From positions 152,749 to 216,748 of the forward strand of contig DF237038.1 of NCBI GenBank assembly GCA_000708835.1: a DNA stretch of 64,000 bases. The letters run 5' to 3'. The notes beneath the pieces were generated by a model that had not been told where the DNA came from, did not search any database, and saw only the letters and a list, made by a program, of their open reading frames with translations. The translations under genes were made by a program, and so were the position numbers. This document shows positions 39,609 through 60,067 of the stretch, one piece after another. Position 1 is the first letter of the stretch. Each line of letters opens with the position of its first letter. This stretch comes from Klebsormidium nitens (Eukaryota; Plantae; Klebsormidiophyceae).

Positions 39609-42600
39609 TTACGACCAAGCTTCCACGTGGTACCGCCTGTTCTTCTCGAGATCCTTGAGCCAAGCGGCAGCTTTCTGCTGCGTCATCTGGCCTTCCCGTT
39701 GCGCCACGATCTCGAGAGCAGTGGCCACGTCGGCGGGCATCTTGTTAGCAGAGCCGGCTACGAAGATCGACGCGCCAGCCTGCAATAACGAATGTGTACG
39801 AGAAACATGTGTTGGTCCACGAATAACGAATGTTTAAGATGCGTCTGCGACCAGAAGCAGATACCGGAATCTACAAACCGATGAGAAAGGACGCCTGACC
39901 GGAAGTGCGTGACAGAAAACACATGACCCCTCCATGACTGCGTGAGGGCCTGTTCGCATACATGAACACATACAGTCTCTCTCTCCTCAGCTTCCTAAAC
40001 GATGCCAAACAAAGCCCAAGTCTGAAAGCAAAGAAGAAAAGCAAGGAGGGTAAACGAAACTTCTCTTCAGTTAGGTTCGGAAGGAGGACTCCGTTCGAGG
40101 GAGGAGACACGACAAGATACAACGGAACCCGAAAAAGGGGAAAGCAAGTCGAACGAAAGAGCAAAAGCAAGACAAAACTATGCTGATTCAAAAGGAAGCC
40201 GGTTGCCGCACCTGGAGCAGCTGCCAGACTCTGCGGCCTGGGTCCTCAATCCTGTGCAAGATAGACTCAGGGTCGGAGGAAGAGTCCATTCAGGGTTGGA
40301 GACACGGCACTATAGAACGGTCAAAGCAAAGTTGGACAAAATGCTAAGAGGAATACCAAAACCATGCTAAACAAAGGAAGGCAGTTGCCGCACCTGGAGC
40401 AGCTGCCAGACTTTGCGGCCTTGGTCCTTAATCTTGTGCGTGACGTACACTTTGAGCATCTGGTCCCGGGAGAACGCCACCGAGAGTCCCCCGCCGCGCG
40501 CCTCGCTCAGGACGCCCTCGCCGCGCGCGTACGAAAGCCACTGCACGCGCGAGCAAGCGCTTTAGTGCGCGAGCAAGCCCTTAATGTGCGAGCAAGCCCT
40601 AAATACGTGAGCACGCCCCTTGATGCGCGAGCAAGCGCCTTGATGCGCGAGCAAGCCTTTGGGTGCGCAAGCAAGGTCCTTCGAAGAATTCTTTCTACTC
40701 AACATATGTTTTAGATACTTCTAATCTGTGCTTACCCTTGAACAGTTGAGAGAAACTTGTCTGTACCTACTAAAACCTTTAGAGACCACCGCAAGCTACG
40801 CAAGCCCGTTCAAGAATCCTGAACAGCCTTAGGAACGCCTCAAACAAGACAGACTGCGGTACGAATCACCGTAGTTTGGGGTGTGCAGCAACTGTGAGTG
40901 AGTGGAATGTCGGGCCGACTATTCGCGTCAGCCTGGGGGGTTTTGCGACAAAGACCAGGAAGATTCAAATGCTATGATTCAAAGGCCCATCGGAAAGCTT
41001 CGATGGGCCTTTAAGTGGAGCCTTCAGAAGGTGAAGCGCTTTTGGTTGGTTGGGCGGTAGCCTCCGACCTACGGCCGATTCTCCATGGCACAGAGTTCCA
41101 TCTTCTATTGGAAGTTGTCAGGACTACGGTGAAATGCAGGCAAATGATGACGAACAAGATTCGAGGAAGGGTGTGGAGCGCCGACGAGGACGGGGAAAGT
41201 ACGAAGCAGAAGAGACGGACAACGTCGCCCAGAAAATCTAGGAGCGTCGCAATATAAAGCGCGCAATCCCGTTTGAAGGTGGAGGGGCCAAGATCAATGG
41301 TGAATGACATTGAAGGGGAGACGGGTCGAGTGACCCTGTACCTTCAAAACGCTAGCAAAACCTAAACGGGGAGAAGAAACTGCGAAGAAACTCCCAAGGG
41401 CAACGATCTGTGACGAATCCATCCAAGGAGAGGGTTCGAATGACCCTGTACCTTTAAAAATCAGCAAGAGCGACACCGGTGAACACCGGCGAAAACGAAA
41501 CCGGGAGAAGAAATTGCACGGGAAGATGGGCCGACTGACCCTAAACCTTCAAACACTAACGGCGCCGAAACCAAGAGAAGAGACCGCGAAGGAAGACGGG
41601 TCGACTGACCTATACCTTCAAACACCACAGCGAAGACGACAATATAAAGACAGGTAAACTGACCCCAGAATATCAAACACTAGCGAATCCGAAACCGGGT
41701 GAGGAAATTGCGAAGGAAAACGGGTCGACTGACCCTATACCTTTACCATCAAACACCAGCGAAAGCAAAACCGCAAAAGAAAACTGCGAAAGGAACGCCG
41801 AAGCGCACCTGGTCCTTGTACAGAAAGTCGCCCTTCTCCCTCCGGCACCCGAAGAAGAACATGCACGGGGCGCCCGGCGTTCCGTTCCGCTCCAGTTCCG
41901 TCCTTTCTTCCAGAAACGACCGGAACGGGGCGCAGCCCGTCCCAGGCCCCACCATAACCATTGGCACATTTGGCGGGGGCAGTTTTAGGAACCCCTTGGA
42001 GACCCACACAGGCAGTCGCACTGGTTGAGAGGGGTGGGGTTCGAGGGAGGCGAGCCAGTGCGAGCAGAGGCCGACACGTGTCCGCTTGTAGGGCGTTTGG
42101 AAGCGGACGACTGCGACGGTGACGTGGGCTTGGCGGGGGTGGGCTAGCAGGGAGGAAGAGATGGAGAAGGCACGTGCCTTTAGGCGGGGAACCTGCGGGA
42201 GCAGGCCGGGCTGATTGTTTGGTAAAAAACGAGAATAAAGAAACCGAAGGTAAAGACTTGGTTTCAGAAAGGTGAAGTGCAAAGGTTGTCTAAAGGTGGG
42301 CCAACAGGGAAGAGGGAATGGAAAAGGCACGTGCCTTTAGGCGGGGGACCTGCGTGGAGGCGAAGAACGATCGGTGGAAACGGCAAAGATGGTGAGAACA
42401 ATCAGAGGGGTGACTACGGGAGAGTTGCTCAGGGGACTGCACGGGCACTCGGGCGAGGGACCTGCGGGAGCGGTGGGGCTTAGAAATACTATGGACGACG
42501 GGAGATCAAGAACACGAAGACGGTGACTTTCTTCCTAGGAATGGGAACGCGACGCTTGCTTACTAGGAGAATTCTTGCCCTGGGGGACTTCTTGAGTCTG

Positions 42601-45600
42601 ACAGGTTTGTTCTGGTGAGTTCGTCACAAAAGACGAAATTGGAACGTATTGCCAACTTAGACCAGGCTCTGAGGGTTGCTTGCATCATCCTGAGGCATGG
42701 GAGATGATTTGCCAGCGGTTTTTAGGCCAGAACGATAGGGACAAGGTCCATTTATCCATTTCGACGCGCACTCTGCCGAATTCGGCTGGCCTTGAAAGAT
42801 GAGAGGTCCATTCAGCACCAAACAAAGCCAGTACGGGTTAGACAGACGTTAACTCGAGGAGAAGCAAGCTTGCCAGCTGTCAGCGAACCGGTCCTACTTA
42901 TCCTTACCTTTTGCATGATCCATTCGAGCGGCAGGTTTGCGGATGCAAGAAATAACAGGAGGTCAGACAGCGGCACTCACACCGACAAATAAGCCACCAA
43001 GCTTCTTGATAGGGCTCTGAATGTCTTAGGAATACGGAAGTACGGAGGACAACGAAAGCTTGCCAGCTGATTCTCACCACTTGCAGGATCCATTCGAGCG
43101 GCAGGTTCGCGGACGGGAAGTCGTCCATAACCTCGACCACCGTCCGGCGCTCCCGCTGGTTGTACCGGTACAAGTCGTCCCGCCCCTCGGCGGTCGCGAA
43201 GTACTGCAGCCGTTCGATCTCGTGCTCCGCAGTAGCGAAATGCGCGAGCACCTGGCAAGAAAATAGCAAGAAAATAGCAAAACTGGAGCCTTTGCAGGGA
43301 TTGTAAACTTGGGGATGCGGAAGCGAGAAGCTTGAAAGAGAATGAGAGCTTTGCCTACAAATGAAAGGTTTGAGAACAGAAGTGAGAAACTCAGGGGCTA
43401 TCGTATGCGGACGCAAAGCTTGTACGACTGAAGAGCTTCTGCTACAAATGGGAGAAGACTTGTAAAGCCTAAACATAGAACGTGCAAATAAGGCTTTGAA
43501 GACAACACCAGAAGAGGCGGATGCTCCATTACAATGTCCTATATGCTGAAGCAGGAAGCGGCAAAAGATGCACCCACAGCTTGTGAGAAATTCAGACAGC
43601 TCAGACCGATTCTCAATCGAACCAGGAGTATTCCTTCTATCCAATAACAGGTTGGAACATATAGCGGTGCTTTTTGGGCCAGCAGAGGCTCTCTAAAAAC
43701 GGTCAAGAAATACATAATGACTTCCAAGGGCGTACGTTTACTGCAACATTTTCCCCCCATCTTCCTCACGTGTGCAGCTTCCGCTGAATCTTTCTCTCCG
43801 CCGAGCTGCCCCGTAGATCCATCTCTCCGCCTTTTGAGGTCTCTCCCAACTTCGAACACGTGGCAGCAGCATGGCTACGGTGTCACAAAATGTATTCGCA
43901 GAAAGGAGCTCACCTCGAAGAAGTATCGTCTAGGCGACGCCGACGCCACGTCCAAGGCCGCTCGGACCAGGGCCCCTATTCGGACAGGTCCAAAGCCGTT
44001 CCCTCCATCCCGGTCCATACCATTCCGGTCGAAACCATTCGCAGCCCCGGCCGCTTTTTGTACCTCCTCCACGCCCTCGACTCCACCCCGATCAACTCCT
44101 AGCTCCACTGGGTTAGGTTTGAGGTCAGCGTGCGGGTTAGGTCCTATGTTTGCATACGAATAATTCAAACTATTGTCCGATACACTTTGCTGAGCGTCCC
44201 CATTTGTGTGCTGAACATTCTGCTGACTGCTCGGACCATTCCGCTGGCCGTCCGCGCCATTCCGTTCGCCGTCCGCACCATTCCGCTGGCCGCCGGAACC
44301 ATGCCGCTGGTCCTCCAAGCCCATCTGCTGGCCGTCCAACTCCCCTTCCCGCCCGTCCGTTCCAAGCTGTCGGCCATTCCGTCCGATTCTCCTCCCGTCC
44401 GATTCCGTTTGTCCGGCGTCCGGAACAGCACCTGACTCCCGCAGTTCAATTACAACCTCCGCATCCGCATCAAGACCGCAGCGCTCGCAGAACCGCCGGA
44501 CGACGTCAGGTGAGTTCTCGGGCATGACGTTGATGACGTCACCTGGAGCATAGGTCATGCCGGAGGCTCCGAGGTCCAGCTCGATGTGCCGGACGTCCTG
44601 CTCGTTGTCGGGTGACGTCAGTCTGACGTTGGCGACCTGGAAAGAGGAAACGAAAGAGCGGGACTCCAGTCAATCATGTCCTGAGACGGCACGTGGTTGT
44701 GCAAGGTATCTGGTGAAGCAGACAATTCCAGGATACGTACGAATGCACTCTACCATGCAGAAGCCAACTGCTTTTCGTGACCTCTCTTGAAGAGAGACAA
44801 CCTTGCCTCGAGCTTTCAGTTGAGCGCAAGTGATTGAACGACCGAAAGCAACGGGTTTGAAAGCTGGCGTCGTTTGTTTCAACTTCTCGGAGGCACCTTC
44901 GTAAAAGTTGAAGCGTCTTTTCCAAAGCGGGCACTGGGATGCTTCTTTTCTTCATAGCGCGACCAGCCGCAAACCCAACAGCGAAAGCACGTAGGACTGG
45001 GACAGTCTGGATAGAGAACACATATCCAACATTTGGTATGTAGTGACCATACTCACCATCGTGGCTAAGTACGGGTTCGCTTGGGAGTACCCCAGTCTTG
45101 CACCCGCTCCACCACCGGCTTTCACTTCCTGACCGGAACTAGCGCTCGTTGCAGCGTCCAGTACTGCAATCGCATGCAGGTTCTCTTCCAGTTCGTCTCC
45201 GCTCGCAGACGCCGTGGCGACCGTTGCGTTTCCGTTTCCAATCCGATCCGCTGCCCGTTCTGTTGAGTGTCCGTTTGCAGATGGCTGATAGTCCCTCTCT
45301 GGGCCCAGAACCCTGACTGCTCCTCCAATTGCTTCTCCAACAGCAGCAATCGACGTCGCATCTCTTTCAGAGTTCTCGATCTCCCCGTTTTCTCGCAAGC
45401 CGACCCGCGGTTGTCCCAGGTTCTGCGAATTTAAACTTAACCCTGCCTTTGCATCATTCGAAGGCGCTTCTGACAAAGGCTCAGGGGGTATTCTCTCTCC
45501 AGCTTTGCGCGCTGGCCGAGAGACGTAGGTGACCTTGAACTTGGGCGGATCGAGCACCAGTGCATCGCTTTCTGATGGTTCGGAAGCTCCGGGCGGCAGC

Positions 45601-53559: not shown

Positions 53560-56500
53560 ATGGAGTCAAGTGCGGAGAACGCAACAGCCGTCCGTCTGAT
53601 TGCCGCCGCCGCAGCCTCGAGTGTTGCAACCGCTCTGGCTTGTTGGTTAAGTGGTCCCCTTGTGCAGATGCCAGGAAACTTCAGCATGACGCTCCTTCAA
53701 GGTGTGACTCACAACTTGTCTCTTCCCTTTCATGAGAAAGACAGTACTGCTGTGCCTGAATCGGAAGAGTCTATATACAATTGGCATTAGGTGTGGCATT
53801 ATTTTTAACAGAGCTTGAAGGATTCAGAGGCTTTTCTGGTTCTGAGCAATTGAGAATGGGCCACCACAGAGGGTTGCAAACAATTCTGAAAGGAGAATTG
53901 CTCAGTGGCTGTAGTAGATTACTGTTGTGGAAGCCTTATAGCCTCCTTACTGCTCTTCTTGGCATCGATGTTATATTTTACCCAGGACAGAAAGTGTAAC
54001 CTTGTTCACTTTTCTGAAGTGTTCTAAATTGACAAGAAACGAAATGCTTTTTTCAATGTCCGAAGAATGAAAAGAATCAATGAAATGAGTAAGCAATCAG
54101 CTGTCTCTCTGAATTGCTTTTCCCCAGGATATCAGTTTTTGATCGGTTATTCAGTATCATCTAGGTCGTAGCAGTGGGAAATGTACCAATGGGGCAAAAA
54201 GCCGATTGCAAAGCTGTAGCTTGTCATTAGAAAAGAAAGAAGCACACAAAATCACTTTAGTCAACAGTTCAACACATCCCGCAGGTCGGAAGGCCGTTCG
54301 CCCTCCCTCTGACGTGGTTGACCCGTTCTGGGCCCTGATCAGAAATGAAGCTCAGCAGATCATTGCTGACACGAGCGGCGGCAGCGCCGAGAGCGCGCTG
54401 ATGTCAGACTACGTCAGCGAGTCCATCGTGAAGTGGGCCACCATCGAGGAAGCCCTGGCCAATCACCTGGCGGAGAAACTAGGCACGGCGGTTTTGTCTG
54501 CGGCCAAGTGGCGGCCTGTGCTGACGCGAGCGCTGGCGGAGGGGAAGCACGCAAGCGGCCTGACACTGGGGGAGGTGGTGCAAAAGGATCTAGAGACGAT
54601 TCGGGTGAGGAACCTGACGTCACGGCACACCAGAAGTAGCGGACATTGAGCATTCAGGAAATTGCCCAGGCTGCAATCATATTCAATATCGGTGGGAGAA
54701 CTCTTCCCTTTGGAGGAGAGGTTGGAAATCGTCTTGCAGAGGTCAACTGGGTCCTTTTGCCAGGAAAGTCTTTGTCTTTGGGGAAGGGGCACCCAGGCTC
54801 AGGCTTGAGCCTCCCCTCCCCTCGCAAGTTAGCAAGAGCTTGTAGTGCGTTTGGTTGGATGTTTAGTTTTGCAGTGGATACTTTGCGTGGGAATAGATCT
54901 GACGAATGCCTATAAAATCGCCCAATATTCACTTGTGCAGCAGCCCATGCTTTGAGATTTCTTGACATGTTTACTGTGCCAGTTGAGGGGGAACCTAGAA
55001 AATGAATCGGCTCTCCAGTCGAAGTACTCACACTCTTAGAGCATCAAAGCTAAGCATCAAAGCTAAGACGAAATCAAACCTTCTTCGCCCAAGGCAATAC
55101 TTACATTGGAAGATTGGAGTCTGCAGATAGATCGTTGGCCCTTCTCCGACATTTCACAAGAGTTCTTGTTGAGAGGTGGCATGCTTCTTACTGCCCCCAA
55201 GAATAGAGATAGTGCGCAGCTATGAAACCATTATCCGCTGAAAGTTCATGTAATATCTTCCCCCCCCCCTTTAGGTTCGTCTCTATGTGCCCCAGCTTCG
55301 AGGCGGCCTTTTCTCCACCTTAAGGAGTTCGTTCCTTGGTTCAGCACTGGTTCTGCACGGTGCCAAGCTAAATCCTAAACCTTAAAAATCCACTGATCTC
55401 AGAAACTTATGCTCCAGGACCGTGACTGTGCCTCCCCCGCTTCGAGCTCGCCTGTGTCCATTCTATGGAGTAATCTCGGGGTCTGCAACGTGCCACCTAA
55501 TGAATATCAGAACGTATAAAACCACCGAGTCCCGAGATTTTCTTTAGGATCAGGACCCTGCCTGCCCCAGCTCTGTGCGCGCGTTCTTCCACTTCAAGGA
55601 GTTTGATATGGATTTGTGAGGTGTCGGGCTAACTTCCAAAACCACTGGAATCTTCAACTTTCGCTTCAGGACCGCGATCCCGCCTGCCCCAGCTTTGCGC
55701 ATGCCTTCTTTTCTGGTCAGCAAGGTGCCTGGCTAAACTCCAGAACTCTTAGAATCACTGACATCAGAGACTCTTGCTTCCAGGACTGCGACCCTGCCTG
55801 CTCCAGCTTTGGCCCCACTTCGAGGAGTCCATTTTCGCATCTACACGGCGCCAGGCTAAATCCTTACTTTCAGAAGCACTGTATTTAGAGAAGTCTAGAA
55901 TGCTGAAGAGGTTTGAAAGTACTGAGTTTAGTATTTTACGTTCCAGGACCGCCACCCCGCCTGCCCCAGGGCTTTGCGCATGCGTTCCTCCACCTCACCT
56001 GCATCCCCAGACTGCAAGGTGCCGGGCCAAATTCCAAACTTTTTGAAATCGATCAACTTCATCAGCTTTTGGCTCAAGGACCGCGACCCCGCCTGCCCCA
56101 GCTCTGCGCACGCGTTCCTCCACTTCAAGGAGTTCATTTTCGCGTCTACACGGCGCAAGGTCAAAACCACTGATTCAAAAAAAAGTTCAGAGAAGTCTGA
56201 ATGCCAAAGAAGTTTCGATTTTACTCATTCCAGTAATTCTCGCTCTAGGACCGCGACCCTGCCTGCCCCAGCTTTGCGCACGCGTTCCTCCACTTCAAGG
56301 GCTTCCTCGGGCTCCAAGCGCACCGCGCCAGCCACTGGCTCTGGACCGCCGACAACAAGAAGCCGCTCGCGTCGCTCATCCAAGCGCGCATTTCCGAGGC
56401 CTTTGCAATGGACATTCACCCGGCGGCGAGGATTGGTGTGGGAGTGTTGATCGACCATGCGACGGGGGTGGTGATCGGCGAGACGGCGGCGGTCGGGGAT

Positions 56501-59500
56501 GGGTGTACGTTGTTGCACGGGGTTACGCTAGGGGGCACCGGGAAGGAGACGGAAGACCGGCATCCAAAGCTGGGAAAGAACGTGAGTCTTGTTCTCCGTC
56601 AGCTCCACGGCGCGCCTGTTTGGCGTTCTGCATTGTGTCCACTATCAATTGCACGTGCTTCGGCCTTGCGATCGACACCGTCCGTAGGTGATGCCGTTCG
56701 TCGTCTTTGCATGCACTCCTTCCAACGTCTCGGGGATAGGAAGCTGGATTTGGCTCTCGACTCCGATTCCGGCAAGCTCAAACCTCGCACCTCTCCTTCG
56801 GCATCGCTGCAAGCGGCCGATACAAGCTTAGACTTGAGATCAGTCATAATCCTGAACCTGCAGCGATTCGTAACGCTCGACCCGAAACGATTCATAAGCC
56901 TTCCGTTAGAAAGAACCTGCAGCGATTCGTAATACCCGGCCCGAAACGCTTTATAACCCCGCACTTGAAACGATGTCAACCGACAAACGAGTCACAACCC
57001 TGCTCACAGGTGCTGGTAGGAGCGGGCGCGAGCATTTTGGGCAACGTCAAAATTGGCGAGGGCGCCAAAGTCGGGGCCGCGGCTCTGGTGCTCACAGACA
57101 TTCCTGCACATGCCACGGCCGTTGGGTCCCCCGCAAAGGTATGTGTTCAAATCCAGAGTTTTATGTTTCGGCTTTCAAGGCTGTTAATATCGTTGGCTTT
57201 GACTTTTTTATCCACGAAACTTTGGCCCTCGGGTGTTGCGCTCTGTCCCCTTATTTTTGTTCCTGAGTCGCCACGTGGATGCCAGGGTTTCTAGCGCCTC
57301 CGAGCTAATGTCCTGCTTAAGGAAGATATTGAGGGGACGGATTGTTCGTAGGCTTGTTTTTGCGTTCGCGAAGCGTTTGACAGCTCATTTTTGCCTTCTG
57401 CGATTCTTATACAGCTCGTGGTTTTACAAACCGGGATTACCTTCTTTTTATCGGTCGTGCTCTAGTGCGGAATTGCAAACCACTCCTGAGCAGATTCGGA
57501 TTTCTGAAACCCGTTCTTAGACAGAAGTTTGATTCTCTGCGTGCAAATTCGTCAAATAGATTCAGCTGGGTGGCTAGAGCACATAAGACCGGCAAAGTGG
57601 AAGCATTGCAAGCACCAGAGTGGACAGGCAATGCCCGCGGCGAATGGCCCTTGCGATTCGTAGACAGTGGGCTTCTCGGGTTGTGCGATCAAAAGAGCTT
57701 GCATCCCGTTTTGCGCCGCCCCTGCAAGTTGCCCGCTCTCACGTTGATCAGACTAGATGTGATAGAATGTTTAGCATTTACCACTTTCCGGTTGAACTAG
57801 CAAAGCTCCAAAAAAGATGAAACGCGTGACACATTGATGCACAGTTTCTTTCATCCGGCAACTGCAGGACGTGCTCCATAGACCAACGTTGAACCTCTGA
57901 TACTCGGGAATCCCTCGAACCATGAGTTATTAAAGTACCAACCTCTCTTGCGACAACTACAGGTGGTGGGGCGCAGCAAGGAGGACTCGCCCGCATCCAA
58001 GATGGAACTTGGAGGATTTTCTGCTTTTGCCCATCTGGAATCATAGAGACTTTGTTACTTTCCGATCCTTCACCAAAATGACGTGTCTCTTCCGCGGCAA
58101 TTACAGGTGGTGGGGCGCAGCAAGGAGGACTCGCCCGCGTCGAAGATGGACCAGATTTGCAAGAACGTGTACCTCTTCCCCAAGAAGGCCCACTGGTTCT
58201 GCCCCTTCCGCACGCTCGACGTCGCGCAGCGCGGCTTTCTCTCGCCGCAGGACGTGTTCGAGAAGCTTAAGCAGAAGAACATCGACGTCTCCATCTCCGA
58301 CGTCGTGGAGATCTTCTTCAAGCTGGTAAGCTCGTTCGTTCTGGAAGTGTTGTCTGTTTGGCTCTGAATGTTCTTCAATTCTTGAAGACACCGCTTGTTT
58401 TGAGAACGCAGACCAGGATTGCACAAGTAGAAGAGCATCGACGTCTCCATTTCCGACGTCGTCGAGATCTTCTTCAAGCTGGTGAGCAACTGTTTACTAC
58501 TGGAAGCGTCGTCTTTCTGCATTTTCACATCTTCTTTTATTGAAAGTAAGCAGAGTCTTATCAGCGCAGTCAAAAGAAATGCTCAAGCAGAAGAGCATCG
58601 ACGTCTCCATTTCCGACGTCGTGGAAATCTTTTTCAAGCTGGTACGCTCGTTTCTTTTGGAAGAGTTGTCTGTCTGGCTCTGGATGTTCTTCAACTCTCG
58701 AAAACACGGACTGACTTGAGGTTTCAGAACAAGGTCTGCGCATGTAACATCCTGATTTTGACTGTGAACATATCACGTGTATTTGTTCTGGACGTGTTGT
58801 CTGTCTGGCTTGTCGGGTCTTCTTTTCCTCCTGAAGTCAAGTAAGTGCTCTGAAGGCGAAGAACTGAAGCTGGCTCAAGCAGAAGGGCATTGAACGCTCC
58901 ATGTCCTTACGGTATTGGCACCTCCTTCAAGCTGGTGTGCTCCTTCTTTCTGGGTGCGTCGTCTTTCTGGCTCTTGGATGTTCTCTTTACCTCTTGAAGA
59001 CAAGCAGTGTTTCGAGAACGCAGACTAAATGTTATTCAACCAGGAGGGCATGGCGATTCCGTCTCCGGCGGTATTGAGATCCTTTCAAAGCTGGTGCGAA
59101 GCTGGTGCGCTCTTCATCGCTGAAAGTGTTGTCTCTCTGGCTTGTCGAAATCCTTCAACTCTTTGCAATCAAAAAGAGTTGCGAGAACTTCGAAGAAGAA
59201 AAGAATGCTCGAGCAGAAGAGCATCGACGTCTCCGTTTTCTACGTCTCTGAAGTGTTCTTCGACCGGGTGCGCTCGTTCGTTCTGGAAGCGTCGTCTTCT
59301 GGCTTGCCGGATCTTGTTTACCTCTTGAAAATCAGGAGAGTCTTATCAGCGCAGCTCAAGAACTGCTCATGCCGAAAAGTATCGACGTGTCCATCTCCGA
59401 CGTTGTCGAGATTCTCTTCAAGCCGGTGCGTTCTGTCTTTCTGGAAGTGCCGACCTTCTGGCTTGTTGGATCTTCTTTTTGTCCTACAAAACGAGCAGAA

Positions 59501-60067
59501 GAACGTCGACGTCATCAAAAGCTTCTTCACACTGGTGCGCGCCGACCAAAGTCGTCAAGGCCTTTTGCCACCTTTTCTCCTGTCTTTGAAGTGTCGATCT
59601 CTTGGCTAAGCTCTTGGTTCCGTTCAGTCCCTTCTTTCTTCTTGAAGTCCCCATCCCCATGCGCAACTCCACCTTAGACGAGCCTGAGACACGCGAACGG
59701 TGGTGCTCGTGCAGTGGGTGTTCAAGGACGGGAGACGAGATCTGGTTACTATCCTGCCCGGCCACGATCGGTCGTAAAAGCCCTTTCGAATTAGACGGTC
59801 AGATCTCTCTGCTTCCTCTCTGAGCAACTTGTTCCTAGTTGCGTTATGGGCGCTGTAGAGCCGCTTGTTGTCGCCCTCTTTGATCCGCTTTCCCTTGCTG
59901 TTCAAATGCAGGACACGGATCACAATGGTCAGATTACCGAACAGGAGTTCCAGCAAGGGTACGACCAGTTCCTGGGGACCCTCAAAAAGCACGGCAGCTT
60001 TAAAACGATAATTGCAAAGCTGGGCTGCGATGATTCAATTCCAGAGAACAAGCCAGTGCTTTTCTGA
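53560..60067 (+). CDS. SAT: Serine O-acetyltransferase (SAT/SERAT, CysE family) fused to a C-terminal EF-hand pair; ~415 aa
   Basis: join(53560-53650 [or 53701; exon 1 uncertain], 54285-54604, 56249-56581, 57010-57138, 58107-58325, 59912-60067), in frame. SATase_N helix region PFWALIRNEA...LANHLAEKL, then DRDPAC...FKGFLGLQAHR, DIHPAARIG.G..IDHATGVVIGETA, HGVTLGGTGK...RHPKLG, GAGASILGNVKIG, AVGSPAK. Then loops DVAQRGFLSPQD and DTDHNGQITEQE. Confidence 0.88.
55261..56248 (+). repeat. Array of 7 degenerate copies of the SAT exon 3 acceptor plus exon start
   Basis: AG|GACCGCGACCCTGCCTGCCCCAGCT... variants with AG at about 55273, 55416, 55546, 55668, 55782, 55945 and 56077. The true acceptor is 56247-56248. 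Confidence 0.9.
57950..59540 (+). repeat. Duplicates of both junctions of SAT exon 5: one acceptor copy and 7 donor copies
   Basis: Acceptor copy ctacag|GTGGTGGGGCGCAGCAAGGAGGACTCGCCCGC at ~57957-58000. Donor copies of GAAGAACATCGACGTCTCCATCTCCGACGTCGTGGAGATCTTCTTCAAGCTG|gt end at 58481, 58641, 58934, 59093, 59267, 59425 and 59534. Confidence 0.9.

What the first reader, a model, noticed from the sequence alone, without database searches (positions are those of the whole stretch)
53560..60067. Serine acetyltransferase with a C-terminal EF-hand pair: a possible Ca2+-gated entry to cysteine synthesis
Seen: the SAT beta-helix ends ...AVGSPAK|gt (57138). The next clean phase-0 exon (58107-58325) starts VVGRSKEDSPASKMDQ, a typical SAT tail, and continues without a stop into FRTLDVAQRGFLSPQDVFEKL (degenerate EF loop). 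It then splices to DTDHNGQITEQEFQQG (59912 onward), a canonical 12-residue Ca2+ loop with D1, D3, N5, G6, I8, E12. The protein ends KPVLF*. Established: bacterial and plant SATs use a free C-terminal Ile to dock into OAS-(thiol)lyase and form the cysteine synthase complex that regulates SAT. Inference: this enzyme has swapped that docking tail for a Ca2+-sensor module, which could tie OAS/cysteine/glutathione flux to Ca2+ signals. I do not recall this architecture, but I cannot confirm it is new.
Basis: partly seen in the sequence, partly recalled or inferred. Interest (0 to 1): 0.82.

Follow-up and report, generated by a model that had tools for sequence, protein, structure and literature searches.

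The report
Serine acetyltransferase fused to EF-hand pair
This algal gene really does encode the first enzyme of cysteine synthesis fused to a calcium-sensor module; the fusion is transcribed, conserved in many algal lineages, and apparently unstudied, so calcium may act directly on sulfur assimilation there.

Summary
A six-exon gene (53560-60067, + strand) encodes a serine acetyltransferase (SAT). Its tail runs, inside one exon, into a degenerate EF-hand and then splices to a canonical Ca2+ loop.

- **Transcripts:** spliced contigs from four runs in four studies carry all five predicted GT..AG junctions. The last junction has only 28-30 nt on its shorter side.
- **Conservation:** a related genomic contig (L001) keeps all six exons, the same splice positions and the same stop. 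Its EF exons are under purifying selection (dN/dS 0.10 and 0.06, dS about 1).
- **Family:** the architecture is not unique. Of 107 SAT cluster representatives with a complete core, 18 carry the same tail. Named members include Spirogloea, a pelagophyte, Eutreptiella and Octactis.
- **Tree:** 17 of these 18 lie on one side of the SAT tree, apart from the Ile-tailed SATs.
- **Databases and literature:** sources call them only "serine O-acetyltransferase", Pfam mostly misses the EF-hands, and I found no paper on the fusion.

Ca2+ binding and any effect on activity are inferred, not shown. The docking Ile is absent (the protein ends in Phe). I class this as a new variant of a known kind, of moderate to high interest.

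The parts
53560..53701 (+). Exon 1 (coding part): start codon plus a hydrophobic N-terminal segment (AVRLIAAAAASSVATALACWL); 1 nt is carried into exon 2.
   Evidence: Translation. The loose end of the RNA contigs before 54283 equals 53670-53699. L001 has the same start and the same hydrophobic segment. Kyte-Doolittle 19-residue maximum is 1.74.
54285..54604 (+). Exon 2: the main part of SATase_N (alpha-helical domain).
   Evidence: Pfam SATase_N 32.9 bits against a cut-off of 21. Joint 54604/56249 is present in 4 runs.
56249..56581 (+). [quoted passage not shown]
   Evidence: NCBIfam cysE profile 10-119, E 3e-40. Soybean SAT 4n69, E 3e-41.
57010..57138 (+). Exon 4: last hexapeptide turns, ending ...AVGSPAK.
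   Evidence: cysE profile 121-162. Joints 56581/57010 and 57138/58107 each have 127 nt on the shorter side.
58107..58325 (+). Exon 5: SAT tail (VVGRSKEDSPASKMDQ), linker, EF-hand 1 and the entering helix of EF-hand 2, all in one open exon.
   Evidence: Pfam EF-hand_7 profile 5-47. 85% amino-acid identity to L001 and dN/dS 0.10.
58218..58253 (+). EF-hand 1 loop DVAQRGFLSPQD: degenerate (Ala at position 3, Arg at position 5), so probably not a Ca2+ site.
   Evidence: The family alignment A2 shows that the G-[FY]-[LI]-[ST]-P motif is conserved while the ligand positions are not.
59912..60067 (+). Exon 6: EF-hand 2 loop, exiting helix, 30-residue C-terminal tail ending KPVLF, and the TGA stop.
   Evidence: Joint 58325/59912 in 4 runs. 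71% amino-acid identity to L001, the same stop, and dN/dS 0.06.
59912..59947 (+). EF-hand 2 loop DTDHNGQITEQE: canonical ligands at positions 1, 3, 5 and 12, with Gly6 and Ile8.
   Evidence: It is the only strict-pattern match in six frames of the window. The same position is canonical in most family members.
57963..58046 (+). Unused copy of the exon 5 acceptor and first 44 nt inside intron 4. If spliced in, it would give a short EF-less tail (..SKMELGGFSAFAHLES, then stop).
   Evidence: Repeat family D11. ORF. No joint to it in any of the 4 runs.
55413..56248 (+). Intron 2 array: about six decayed copies (period 114-170) of 'AG acceptor plus the first ~60 nt of exon 3'.
   Evidence: Repeat families D4, D5 and D7. 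Only low-depth unspliced contigs lie here.
58413..59522 (+). Intron 5 array: about six decayed copies (period ~124-170) of 'the last ~60 nt of exon 5 plus GT donor plus ~90 nt'.
   Evidence: Repeat families D1-D3. The copies are closer to the window's own exon than to L001's exon.

Best explanation
Shown: this is an expressed six-exon nuclear gene of a eukaryotic alga. It encodes a catalytically intact-looking serine O-acetyltransferase. Where canonical SATs have a C-terminal docking tail, this protein continues through a flexible linker of about 25-35 residues into an EF-hand pair. EF1 is degenerate and EF2 is canonical. The protein ends in Phe, not Ile. It belongs to a conserved SAT subfamily with this tail that is spread over several algal lineages.

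Inferred mechanism: EF2 binds one Ca2+. The resulting change in the EF pair repositions the linker. In ordinary SATs this segment lies next to the active site and takes part both in feedback inhibition by cysteine and in docking to OAS-(thiol)lyase. Ca2+ would therefore directly tune SAT activity or its cysteine sensitivity, replacing regulation through the cysteine synthase complex. A hydrophobic N-terminal segment, shared by many family members, may tether the enzyme to a membrane.

My odds: real fused gene and conserved family about 0.95; Ca2+ binding at EF2 about 0.7; cis-regulation of SAT by Ca2+ about 0.4.
For: - **Transcripts:** spliced contigs from four studies carry all five junctions, and exon 5 holds the SAT tail and EF1 in one open exon.
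- **Domain continuity:** the Pfam EF-hand_7 profile is contiguous over the exon 5/6 junction. cDNA- or ORF-derived homologues are continuous there, as ..LFFxL followed directly by DxDxDG.
- **Conservation:** L001 keeps the exons, splice positions and stop. dN/dS is 0.10 for exon 5 and 0.06 for exon 6, at dS about 1 or above, which matches the SAT core at 0.06-0.16.
- **Family:** 18 of 107 SAT cluster representatives have the tail, and 17 of them lie on one side of the tree. 35 of 37 Ile-tailed SATs lie on the other side.
- **Taxa:** Spirogloea, Pelagophyceae sp. CCMP2097, Eutreptiella and Octactis.
- **Core:** SAT motifs are identical to soybean SAT 4n69.
- **Loop:** the EF2 loop is canonical and is the only such match in the window.
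- **Fold:** the AF2 model of the tail of family member P0013 has pLDDT above 90 over about 60 residues, and its top 50 Foldseek matches are all EF-hand proteins. The linker has low confidence, which suggests it is flexible.
- **Literature:** the SAT C-terminal tail contributes to cysteine feedback inhibition and to complex formation, and the terminal Ile is critical for the complex (PMC13040420). Soybean SAT is regulated by Ca2+ through CDPK phosphorylation (Liu et al. 2006, cited in PMC4702179).
Against: - There is no biochemical evidence for Ca2+ binding or for any effect on activity.
- EF1 is degenerate, so at most one site is expected.
- Per-exon Pfam EF-hand scores (19.4 and 15.5 bits) are below the 30-bit cut-off.
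- Foldseek E-values for the proxy tail are weak (0.06-0.16).
- The last splice joint has only 28-30 nt on one side.
- The closest cluster, P0004 (73% identity in the core), has a diverged tail without an EF loop, so the module is dispensable in some relatives.
- The structure models are of a homologue (P0013), not of the window's own protein.
Confidence: 0.7

Rival explanations
1. The EF pair is a Ca2+-dependent docking module acting in trans. When Ca2+-loaded, it binds a partner (OAS-(thiol)lyase, a transporter or another enzyme) or a membrane surface. Ca2+ would then control where the enzyme sits or whom it meets, not its catalytic rate.
For: - EF pairs usually act by clamping a target helix (general knowledge).
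- The canonical docking Ile is gone, so some other contact with the pathway would be needed.
- Many family members carry an N-terminal hydrophobic segment followed by basic residues, which suggests a fixed location.
- The 30-residue tail after EF2 is conserved between the window and L001, including the terminal ..KP[VL]LF.
Against: No partner is known and none was tested. The tails after EF2 are not conserved across the family. The linker's position next to the active site makes a cis effect the simpler reading.
Confidence: 0.2
2. The EF pair is a structural or vestigial appendage with no Ca2+ signalling role, for example a stabilising cap or an oligomerisation aid.
For: - EF1 is degenerate throughout the family except in P0080.
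- Several members have a degenerate EF2: Ala at position 12 in P0149 and P0065, and no strict-pattern match in P0048, P0116 or P0121.
- P0004 has lost the loop altogether.
Against: The EF2 ligand positions are canonical in most members across very distant lineages. They are unchanged between the window and L001 at saturated synonymous divergence. That pattern points to selection on the Ca2+ site itself.
Confidence: 0.1
3. Gene-model artefact: the EF exons belong to another transcript, or the real mRNA ends in the duplicated short exon at 57963-58046.
For: An intact acceptor copy with a short ORF and a stop lies in intron 4. Contigs drop rare isoforms. The final joint has less than 31 nt on one side.
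Against: No joint to 57963 appears in any of four runs. The 57138/58107 joint has 127 nt on its shorter side. Exon 5 itself links the SAT tail and EF1. Homologues are continuous over the exon 5/6 junction. The exons are conserved with low dN/dS in L001.
Confidence: 0.03

Closest known systems
Canonical plant and bacterial serine acetyltransferases (soybean GmSerat2;1, PDB 4n69; E. coli CysE)
   Same: SATase_N plus left-handed beta-helix core. The DRDPAC, DIHPAA, DHATG and GGTGK..DRHPK motifs align identically (E 3e-41). The tail begins in the same way (..PAK-VVG-R/G-K-E..P...MDQ).
   Different: Canonical enzymes end about 20-40 residues after the helix in a free Ile, which docks into OAS-(thiol)lyase. 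37 of 107 representatives end in Ile, many with ..DY[VIM]I. Here an EF-hand pair follows and the protein ends in Phe.
Ca2+ control of soybean SAT by CDPK phosphorylation of its C-terminal region (Liu et al. 2006, J Biol Chem 281:27405; cited in PMC4702179)
   Same: It links Ca2+ signals to SAT through the enzyme's C-terminal region. From my own knowledge, phosphorylation relieves cysteine feedback inhibition under oxidative stress.
   Different: In soybean the sensor (EF-hands of a CDPK) is a separate kinase acting in trans by phosphorylation. Here the sensor is fused to the SAT polypeptide.
Enzymes with a fused EF-hand sensor (CDPKs, plant Rboh NADPH oxidases, external NAD(P)H dehydrogenases, mitochondrial glycerol-3-phosphate dehydrogenase) - from my own knowledge
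   Same: The logic is the same: a catalytic domain with an EF-hand module in cis that confers direct Ca2+ control.
   Different: The catalytic domain is unrelated. No autoinhibitory junction has been identified here. There is one functional-looking site instead of two to four.
Uncharacterised database entries with the same architecture: Octactis speculum A0A7S2BJI2 (P0182), Pelagophyceae sp. CCMP2097 KAJ1444591.1 (P0151) and KAJ1454061.1 (P0069), Spirogloea muscicola SM000209S06385 (P0013), Eutreptiella braarudii (P0174)
   Same: SAT core, conserved linker (D..L..V ... F.SIW..LD), EF pair with a canonical second loop, and often an N-terminal hydrophobic segment.
   Different: Core identity is only 40-70%. 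The tails after EF2 are unrelated and vary in length, up to several hundred residues. Sources name them only 'serine O-acetyltransferase' or 'trimeric LpxA-like protein', and none has been studied.

Membership tests
Serine O-acetyltransferase (CysE/SERAT) | N-terminal SATase_N alpha-helical domain | tested here: met
   Pfam PF06426 scores 32.9 bits on exon 2 and 28.5 bits on exon 3 against a cut-off of 21. Profile positions 2-79 and 82-105 are contiguous over the junction.
Serine O-acetyltransferase (CysE/SERAT) | Left-handed beta-helix core specific to SAT, not merely any hexapeptide transferase | tested here: met
   NCBIfam cysE TIGR01172 profile 10-119 falls on exon 3 (137.9 bits) and 121-162 on exon 4 (52 bits), and it is the best or near-best family on both. 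The best solved relatives are all SATs. No single exon reaches the whole-protein cut-off, as expected for fragments. The joined protein was not scored.
Serine O-acetyltransferase (CysE/SERAT) | Catalytic Asp-His dyad and Ser/Cys-binding residues (E. coli D92, P93, D143, D157, H158, R192, H193; numbering from memory) | tested here: met
   DRDPAC, DIHPAA, DHATG and DRHPK align identically with soybean SAT 4n69 and with 6wye.
Serine O-acetyltransferase (CysE/SERAT) | Acetyl-CoA:L-serine O-acetyltransferase activity | not testable with these tools
   This needs an enzyme assay.
SAT that forms the cysteine synthase complex | Free C-terminal Ile that inserts into the OAS-(thiol)lyase active site (PMC13040420) | tested here: not met
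   The protein ends ..ENKPVLF and L001 ends ..DKPLLF. Whether a terminal Phe can dock is unknown.
EF-hand pair (PF13499) | 12-residue loop with ligands at positions 1, 3, 5 and 12, Gly6 and a hydrophobic residue at 8, flanked by helices | tested here: met
   EF2 (DTDHNGQITEQE) fits the strict pattern and is the only such match in six frames of the window. EF1 (DVAQRGFLSPQD) fails at positions 3 and 5, so only one of the two hands meets this feature.
EF-hand pair (PF13499) | Score above Pfam's gathering threshold | tested here: inconclusive
   Exon 5 scores 19.4 bits (profile 5-47) and exon 6 scores 15.5 bits (profile 50-66), against a cut-off of 30. The domain is split by the intron and the joined protein was not scored. 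Family member P0010 scores 31.0 bits. Eight of the 41 members on that side of the tree match at E <= 0.01.
EF-hand pair (PF13499) | Four-helix EF-pair fold with a short beta-bridge between the two loops | tested here: inconclusive
   Tested on a proxy only, the tail of P0013. pLDDT is above 90 over about 60 residues, there are beta-bridges in both loops, and three of the four helices are clear. The top 50 Foldseek matches are all EF-hand proteins, with probability mostly 0.8-1.0 but E-values of 0.06-0.16.
EF-hand pair (PF13499) | Ca2+ binding | not testable with these tools
   This needs ITC, a 45Ca overlay or a mobility shift.
CDPK-like cis-regulated enzyme (it may work like one; no membership is claimed) | Autoinhibitory segment that the Ca2+-loaded EF module binds in cis | not tested
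   A conserved linker motif (D..L..V, F.SIW) exists, but no contact analysis was done.

The most novel reading that the evidence does not exclude
In a broad set of algae, a membrane-tethered SAT with its own Ca2+ sensor replaces regulation by the cysteine synthase complex. Cytosolic Ca2+ transients (stress, light or nutrient signals) would then directly open or close the supply of O-acetylserine, and with it cysteine and glutathione synthesis. Land plants later achieved the same link indirectly, through CDPK phosphorylation of the SAT tail.
Probability: 0.3. Interest if true: 0.8.

Novelty: new variant of a known kind. Interest (0 to 1): 0.62.

Why it matters
SAT is the rate-limiting entry to cysteine, glutathione and all reduced-sulfur metabolism. 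Its textbook regulation rests on the C-terminal tail, through cysteine feedback and docking to OAS-(thiol)lyase. Here that tail carries a Ca2+ sensor, in a family conserved from streptophyte algae to pelagophytes and euglenids. That implies a direct second-messenger input into sulfur assimilation which reviews of algal and plant sulfur metabolism do not mention.

The idea is directly testable with one recombinant protein and one loop mutant. It may also explain how marine phytoplankton couple stress Ca2+ signals to thiol and DMSP-precursor supply. Finally, it shows that domain databases under-report the fusion, because most of these EF-hands fall below Pfam's threshold.

Tried and rejected
1. 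**Word-index protein search with the tail.** Searching the tail of P0013 found only P0013 itself. Searching the tail of P0010 found three relatives. These tails are too divergent for 5-residue words, so the sparse results say nothing about rarity.
2. **Solved structures.** Exon 5 alone against the PDB sequences gave no meaningful match.
3. **Tandem Repeats Finder.** It missed the intronic arrays because the copies are too diverged. The repeat finder found them.
4. **Alternative terminal exon at 57963-58046.** I considered it as the real 3' end and rejected it, because no joint to it appears in any run.
5. **EF exons as a separate gene.** Rejected, because exon 5 links both parts, and because of the joints and the homologues.
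6. **Literature.** Seven full-text searches found no paper on a SAT to EF-hand fusion.
7. **Earlier scan notes.** They held nothing on SAT or cysteine synthase elsewhere in this genome.
8. **N-terminal hydrophobic segments.** My crude comparison between the two sides of the tree was weak: 3 of 16 against 2 of 33 at KD >= 1.6. This was partly because many representatives are N-terminally truncated. The trend rests mainly on inspecting complete members.
9. **Organism.** Not identified, because run labels are coded. My guesses are not used as evidence.

Full report
**What is there.** The stretch is part of a eukaryotic, intron-rich genome of about 50-56% GC. Six open segments on the + strand fit together in frame with GT..AG borders:

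| Exon | Coordinates | Content |
|---|---|---|
| 1 | 53560-53701 | start codon, hydrophobic N-terminal segment |
| 2 | 54285-54604 | SATase_N |
| 3 | 56249-56581 | end of SATase_N, catalytic core |
| 4 | 57010-57138 | last hexapeptide turns |
| 5 | 58107-58325 | SAT tail, linker, EF-hand 1 |
| 6 | 59912-60067 | EF-hand 2, C-terminal tail, TGA stop |

Pfam puts SATase_N on exons 2-3 and Hexapep on exons 3-4. It splits one EF-hand_7 domain over exon 5 (profile 5-47) and exon 6 (profile 50-66). NCBIfam's cysE model is likewise contiguous over exons 3 and 4. Exon 3 aligns with soybean SAT 4n69 at E 3e-41, with all active-site motifs identical.

Exon 5 is the key piece. In one uninterrupted exon it holds the usual start of a SAT tail and then a helix-loop-helix with a degenerate loop, DVAQRGFLSPQD. 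Exon 6 opens with DTDHNGQITEQE. This fits the strict EF-hand loop pattern, which I wrote from memory, and it is the only match to that pattern in all six frames of the 64-kb window. The protein ends ..KPVLF.

**Is it transcribed as proposed?** Twenty runs hold part of the stretch. I laid the contigs of four of them, from four studies and two organism labels. The runs are only guessed to be RNA, but the contigs are spliced, so they derive from RNA.

- All four runs show joints 54604/56249, 56581/57010, 57138/58107 and 58325/59912.
- The loose end upstream of exon 2 equals the end of exon 1.
- Introns are covered only by separate low-depth contigs, which I read as pre-mRNA or retained introns.
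- No joint leads to the duplicated acceptor at 57963.

There is one caveat. The last joint has 28-30 nt on its shorter side. This is because the contig graph branches there with an intron-retaining contig (58593-59940). It falls just short of the 31 nt the tool recommends. Independent support comes from the homologues described below.

**A related genome.** The protein search with exon 3 gave P0005, an exon-only prediction on a 62-kb metagenomic eukaryotic contig. That locus, L001, has all six exons with the same start, the same splice positions and the same stop. Synonymous sites are about saturated (dS about 1 or more). Despite that, dN/dS is 0.10 for exon 5 and 0.06 for exon 6, the same range as the SAT core at 0.06-0.16. 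Every Ca2+-ligand position of EF2 is unchanged. The EF exons are therefore coding and constrained.

**A family, not a one-off.** I compared the best 150 cluster representatives (50% identity clusters) of the SAT core with exons 5 and 6, each on its own.

- Many representatives match exon 5 over its full length and continue directly into a canonical loop at the position of exon 6.
- Pfam finds EF-hand families in 7 of the 10 I scanned individually, but only P0010 passes the gathering score. On the EF side of the tree, 8 of 41 match EF-hand_7 at E <= 0.01. This is why precomputed annotations mostly list only SATase_N and Hexapep.
- In the tail alignment A2, homologues are continuous (..LFFxL followed by DxDxDG..) exactly where the window has intron 5.
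- Named members are Spirogloea muscicola (Zygnematophyceae), Pelagophyceae sp. CCMP2097 (two paralogues), Eutreptiella braarudii (a euglenid), Octactis speculum (a dictyochophyte), and MMETSP transcripts.
- The sources name them 'serine O-acetyltransferase' or 'trimeric LpxA-like protein'.

I built a quick maximum-likelihood tree of the core only (153 columns, tails excluded; the window is represented by exon 3 alone). It puts 17 of 18 EF-tailed representatives on one side of a branch (42 rows, SH-aLRT 89, not starred). On the other side are 35 of 37 Ile-tailed SATs. The window sits with P0004 and Spirogloea P0013. This is consistent with one origin but does not prove it. Within that side, many tails are long but unclassified.

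**Fold.** AlphaFold2 models were made of P0013, used as a proxy because the window's own protein is split over exons.

- In the whole-protein model, the SAT core is confident. A low-confidence stretch of about 35 residues follows, and then a confident helical module.
- The tail modelled alone has pLDDT above 90 over about 60 residues and beta-bridges in both loops.
- Its 50 best Foldseek matches in the PDB are all EF-hand proteins: calmodulin lobes, troponin C, CBL2 and hippocalcin. E-values are weak, 0.06-0.16, as is usual for so short a domain.

**How it most likely works.** Shown so far: an intact-looking SAT core, a flexible linker, one canonical and one degenerate EF-hand, no terminal Ile, and conservation.

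[quoted passage not shown] Soybean SAT is phosphorylated in a Ca2+-regulated manner (Liu et al. 2006, cited in PMC4702179); from my own knowledge the kinase is a CDPK acting on the C-terminal region.

My inference is that Ca2+ binding at EF2 changes the EF pair and with it the position of the linker next to the active site. That would tune activity or cysteine sensitivity in cis, about 0.4. The alternatives are Ca2+-dependent docking to a partner or membrane, about 0.2, or a structural remnant, about 0.1.

Many complete family members carry an N-terminal hydrophobic stretch followed by basic residues, and so do the window and L001. This may be a membrane anchor. In lineages with secondary plastids it could instead be part of a targeting signal, and my statistical comparison was weak.

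Two clusters combine the EF-like tail with a terminal Ile, but have Ala at loop position 12. The closest cluster, P0004, has lost the loop. The module is therefore evolutionarily labile.

**Novelty.** Full-text searches pairing serine acetyltransferase or the cysteine synthase complex with EF-hand or calcium-binding gave no paper on the fusion. A 2024 review of the evolution of plant sulfur metabolism has no occurrence of 'calcium'. A review of diatom cysteine synthesis and a 2025 survey of CysE diversity do not mention extra domains. The architecture does exist in UniRef with automatic Pfam hits. I therefore class it as a new variant of a known kind: a known enzyme and a known sensor in an undescribed and unstudied combination. 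This gene is one member of the family.

**Left out by rule.** The six exons were never joined into one protein for any search, fold or tree. Every query was a single exon by reference, or a database protein.

Noticed in passing
window 55413-56248 (intron 2), 57943-58006 (intron 4), 58413-59522 (intron 5); L001 9390-9760, 10457-10521, 11849-12310, 12947-13142: Introns of this gene hold tandem arrays, with a period of about 115-170 nt, of decayed copies of exon-intron boundaries. The copies are the acceptor plus the start of exon 3, the acceptor plus the start of exon 5, and the end of exon 5 plus its donor. The relative L001 has arrays of the same kind in the same introns but with different copy numbers, plus a copy of the exon 3 end with its donor in intron 3. 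The window's intron 5 and intron 4 copies are closer to the window's own exon than to L001's exon, so the arrays are recent or homogenised. Splicing uses only the copy that is contiguous with the rest of the exon. The cause is unexplained.
   Followed up: partly
window 40191-43113: Further local two-copy duplications with spacings of 157-194 nt lie in another gene region. One pair (42897 and 43067) looks like a small exon with its AG and GT. Boundary-scale tandem duplication may therefore be a habit of this genome.
   Followed up: no
window 53590-53650 (exon 1); P0151, P0039, P0116, P0171, P0174, P0010, P0028: A hydrophobic N-terminal segment, usually followed by Arg/Lys, is seen in the window, in L001 and in many complete EF-tailed SATs of distant lineages. 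It may be a membrane anchor or part of a targeting signal.
   Followed up: partly
L002-L007 (transcript contigs encoding P0004): P0004 is the closest full-length cluster (73% identity in exon 3), seen in 13 transcript contigs. Its 114-residue tail matches only the first ~40 residues of exon 5 and has no EF loop, so the module was apparently lost or replaced in a near relative.
   Followed up: partly
P0001 (944 aa) and P0002 (1521 aa): The two top-scoring representatives contain 5 and 7 separate stretches that match exon 3. They may be gene predictions that read through repeated SAT exons or tandem SAT genes.
   Followed up: no
window 58297-58462 and 58593-59940: Low-depth RNA contigs read through the exon 5 donor and into exon 6 from the intron. 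A retained intron 5 would end the protein 13 codons after exon 5 and remove EF2.
   Followed up: no
P0149/P0171 and P0065: These family members have an EF-like tail and also a terminal Ile (..MSIMI..YTFDI). Their second loop has Ala at position 12. They may be intermediates that keep docking to OAS-(thiol)lyase.
   Followed up: no
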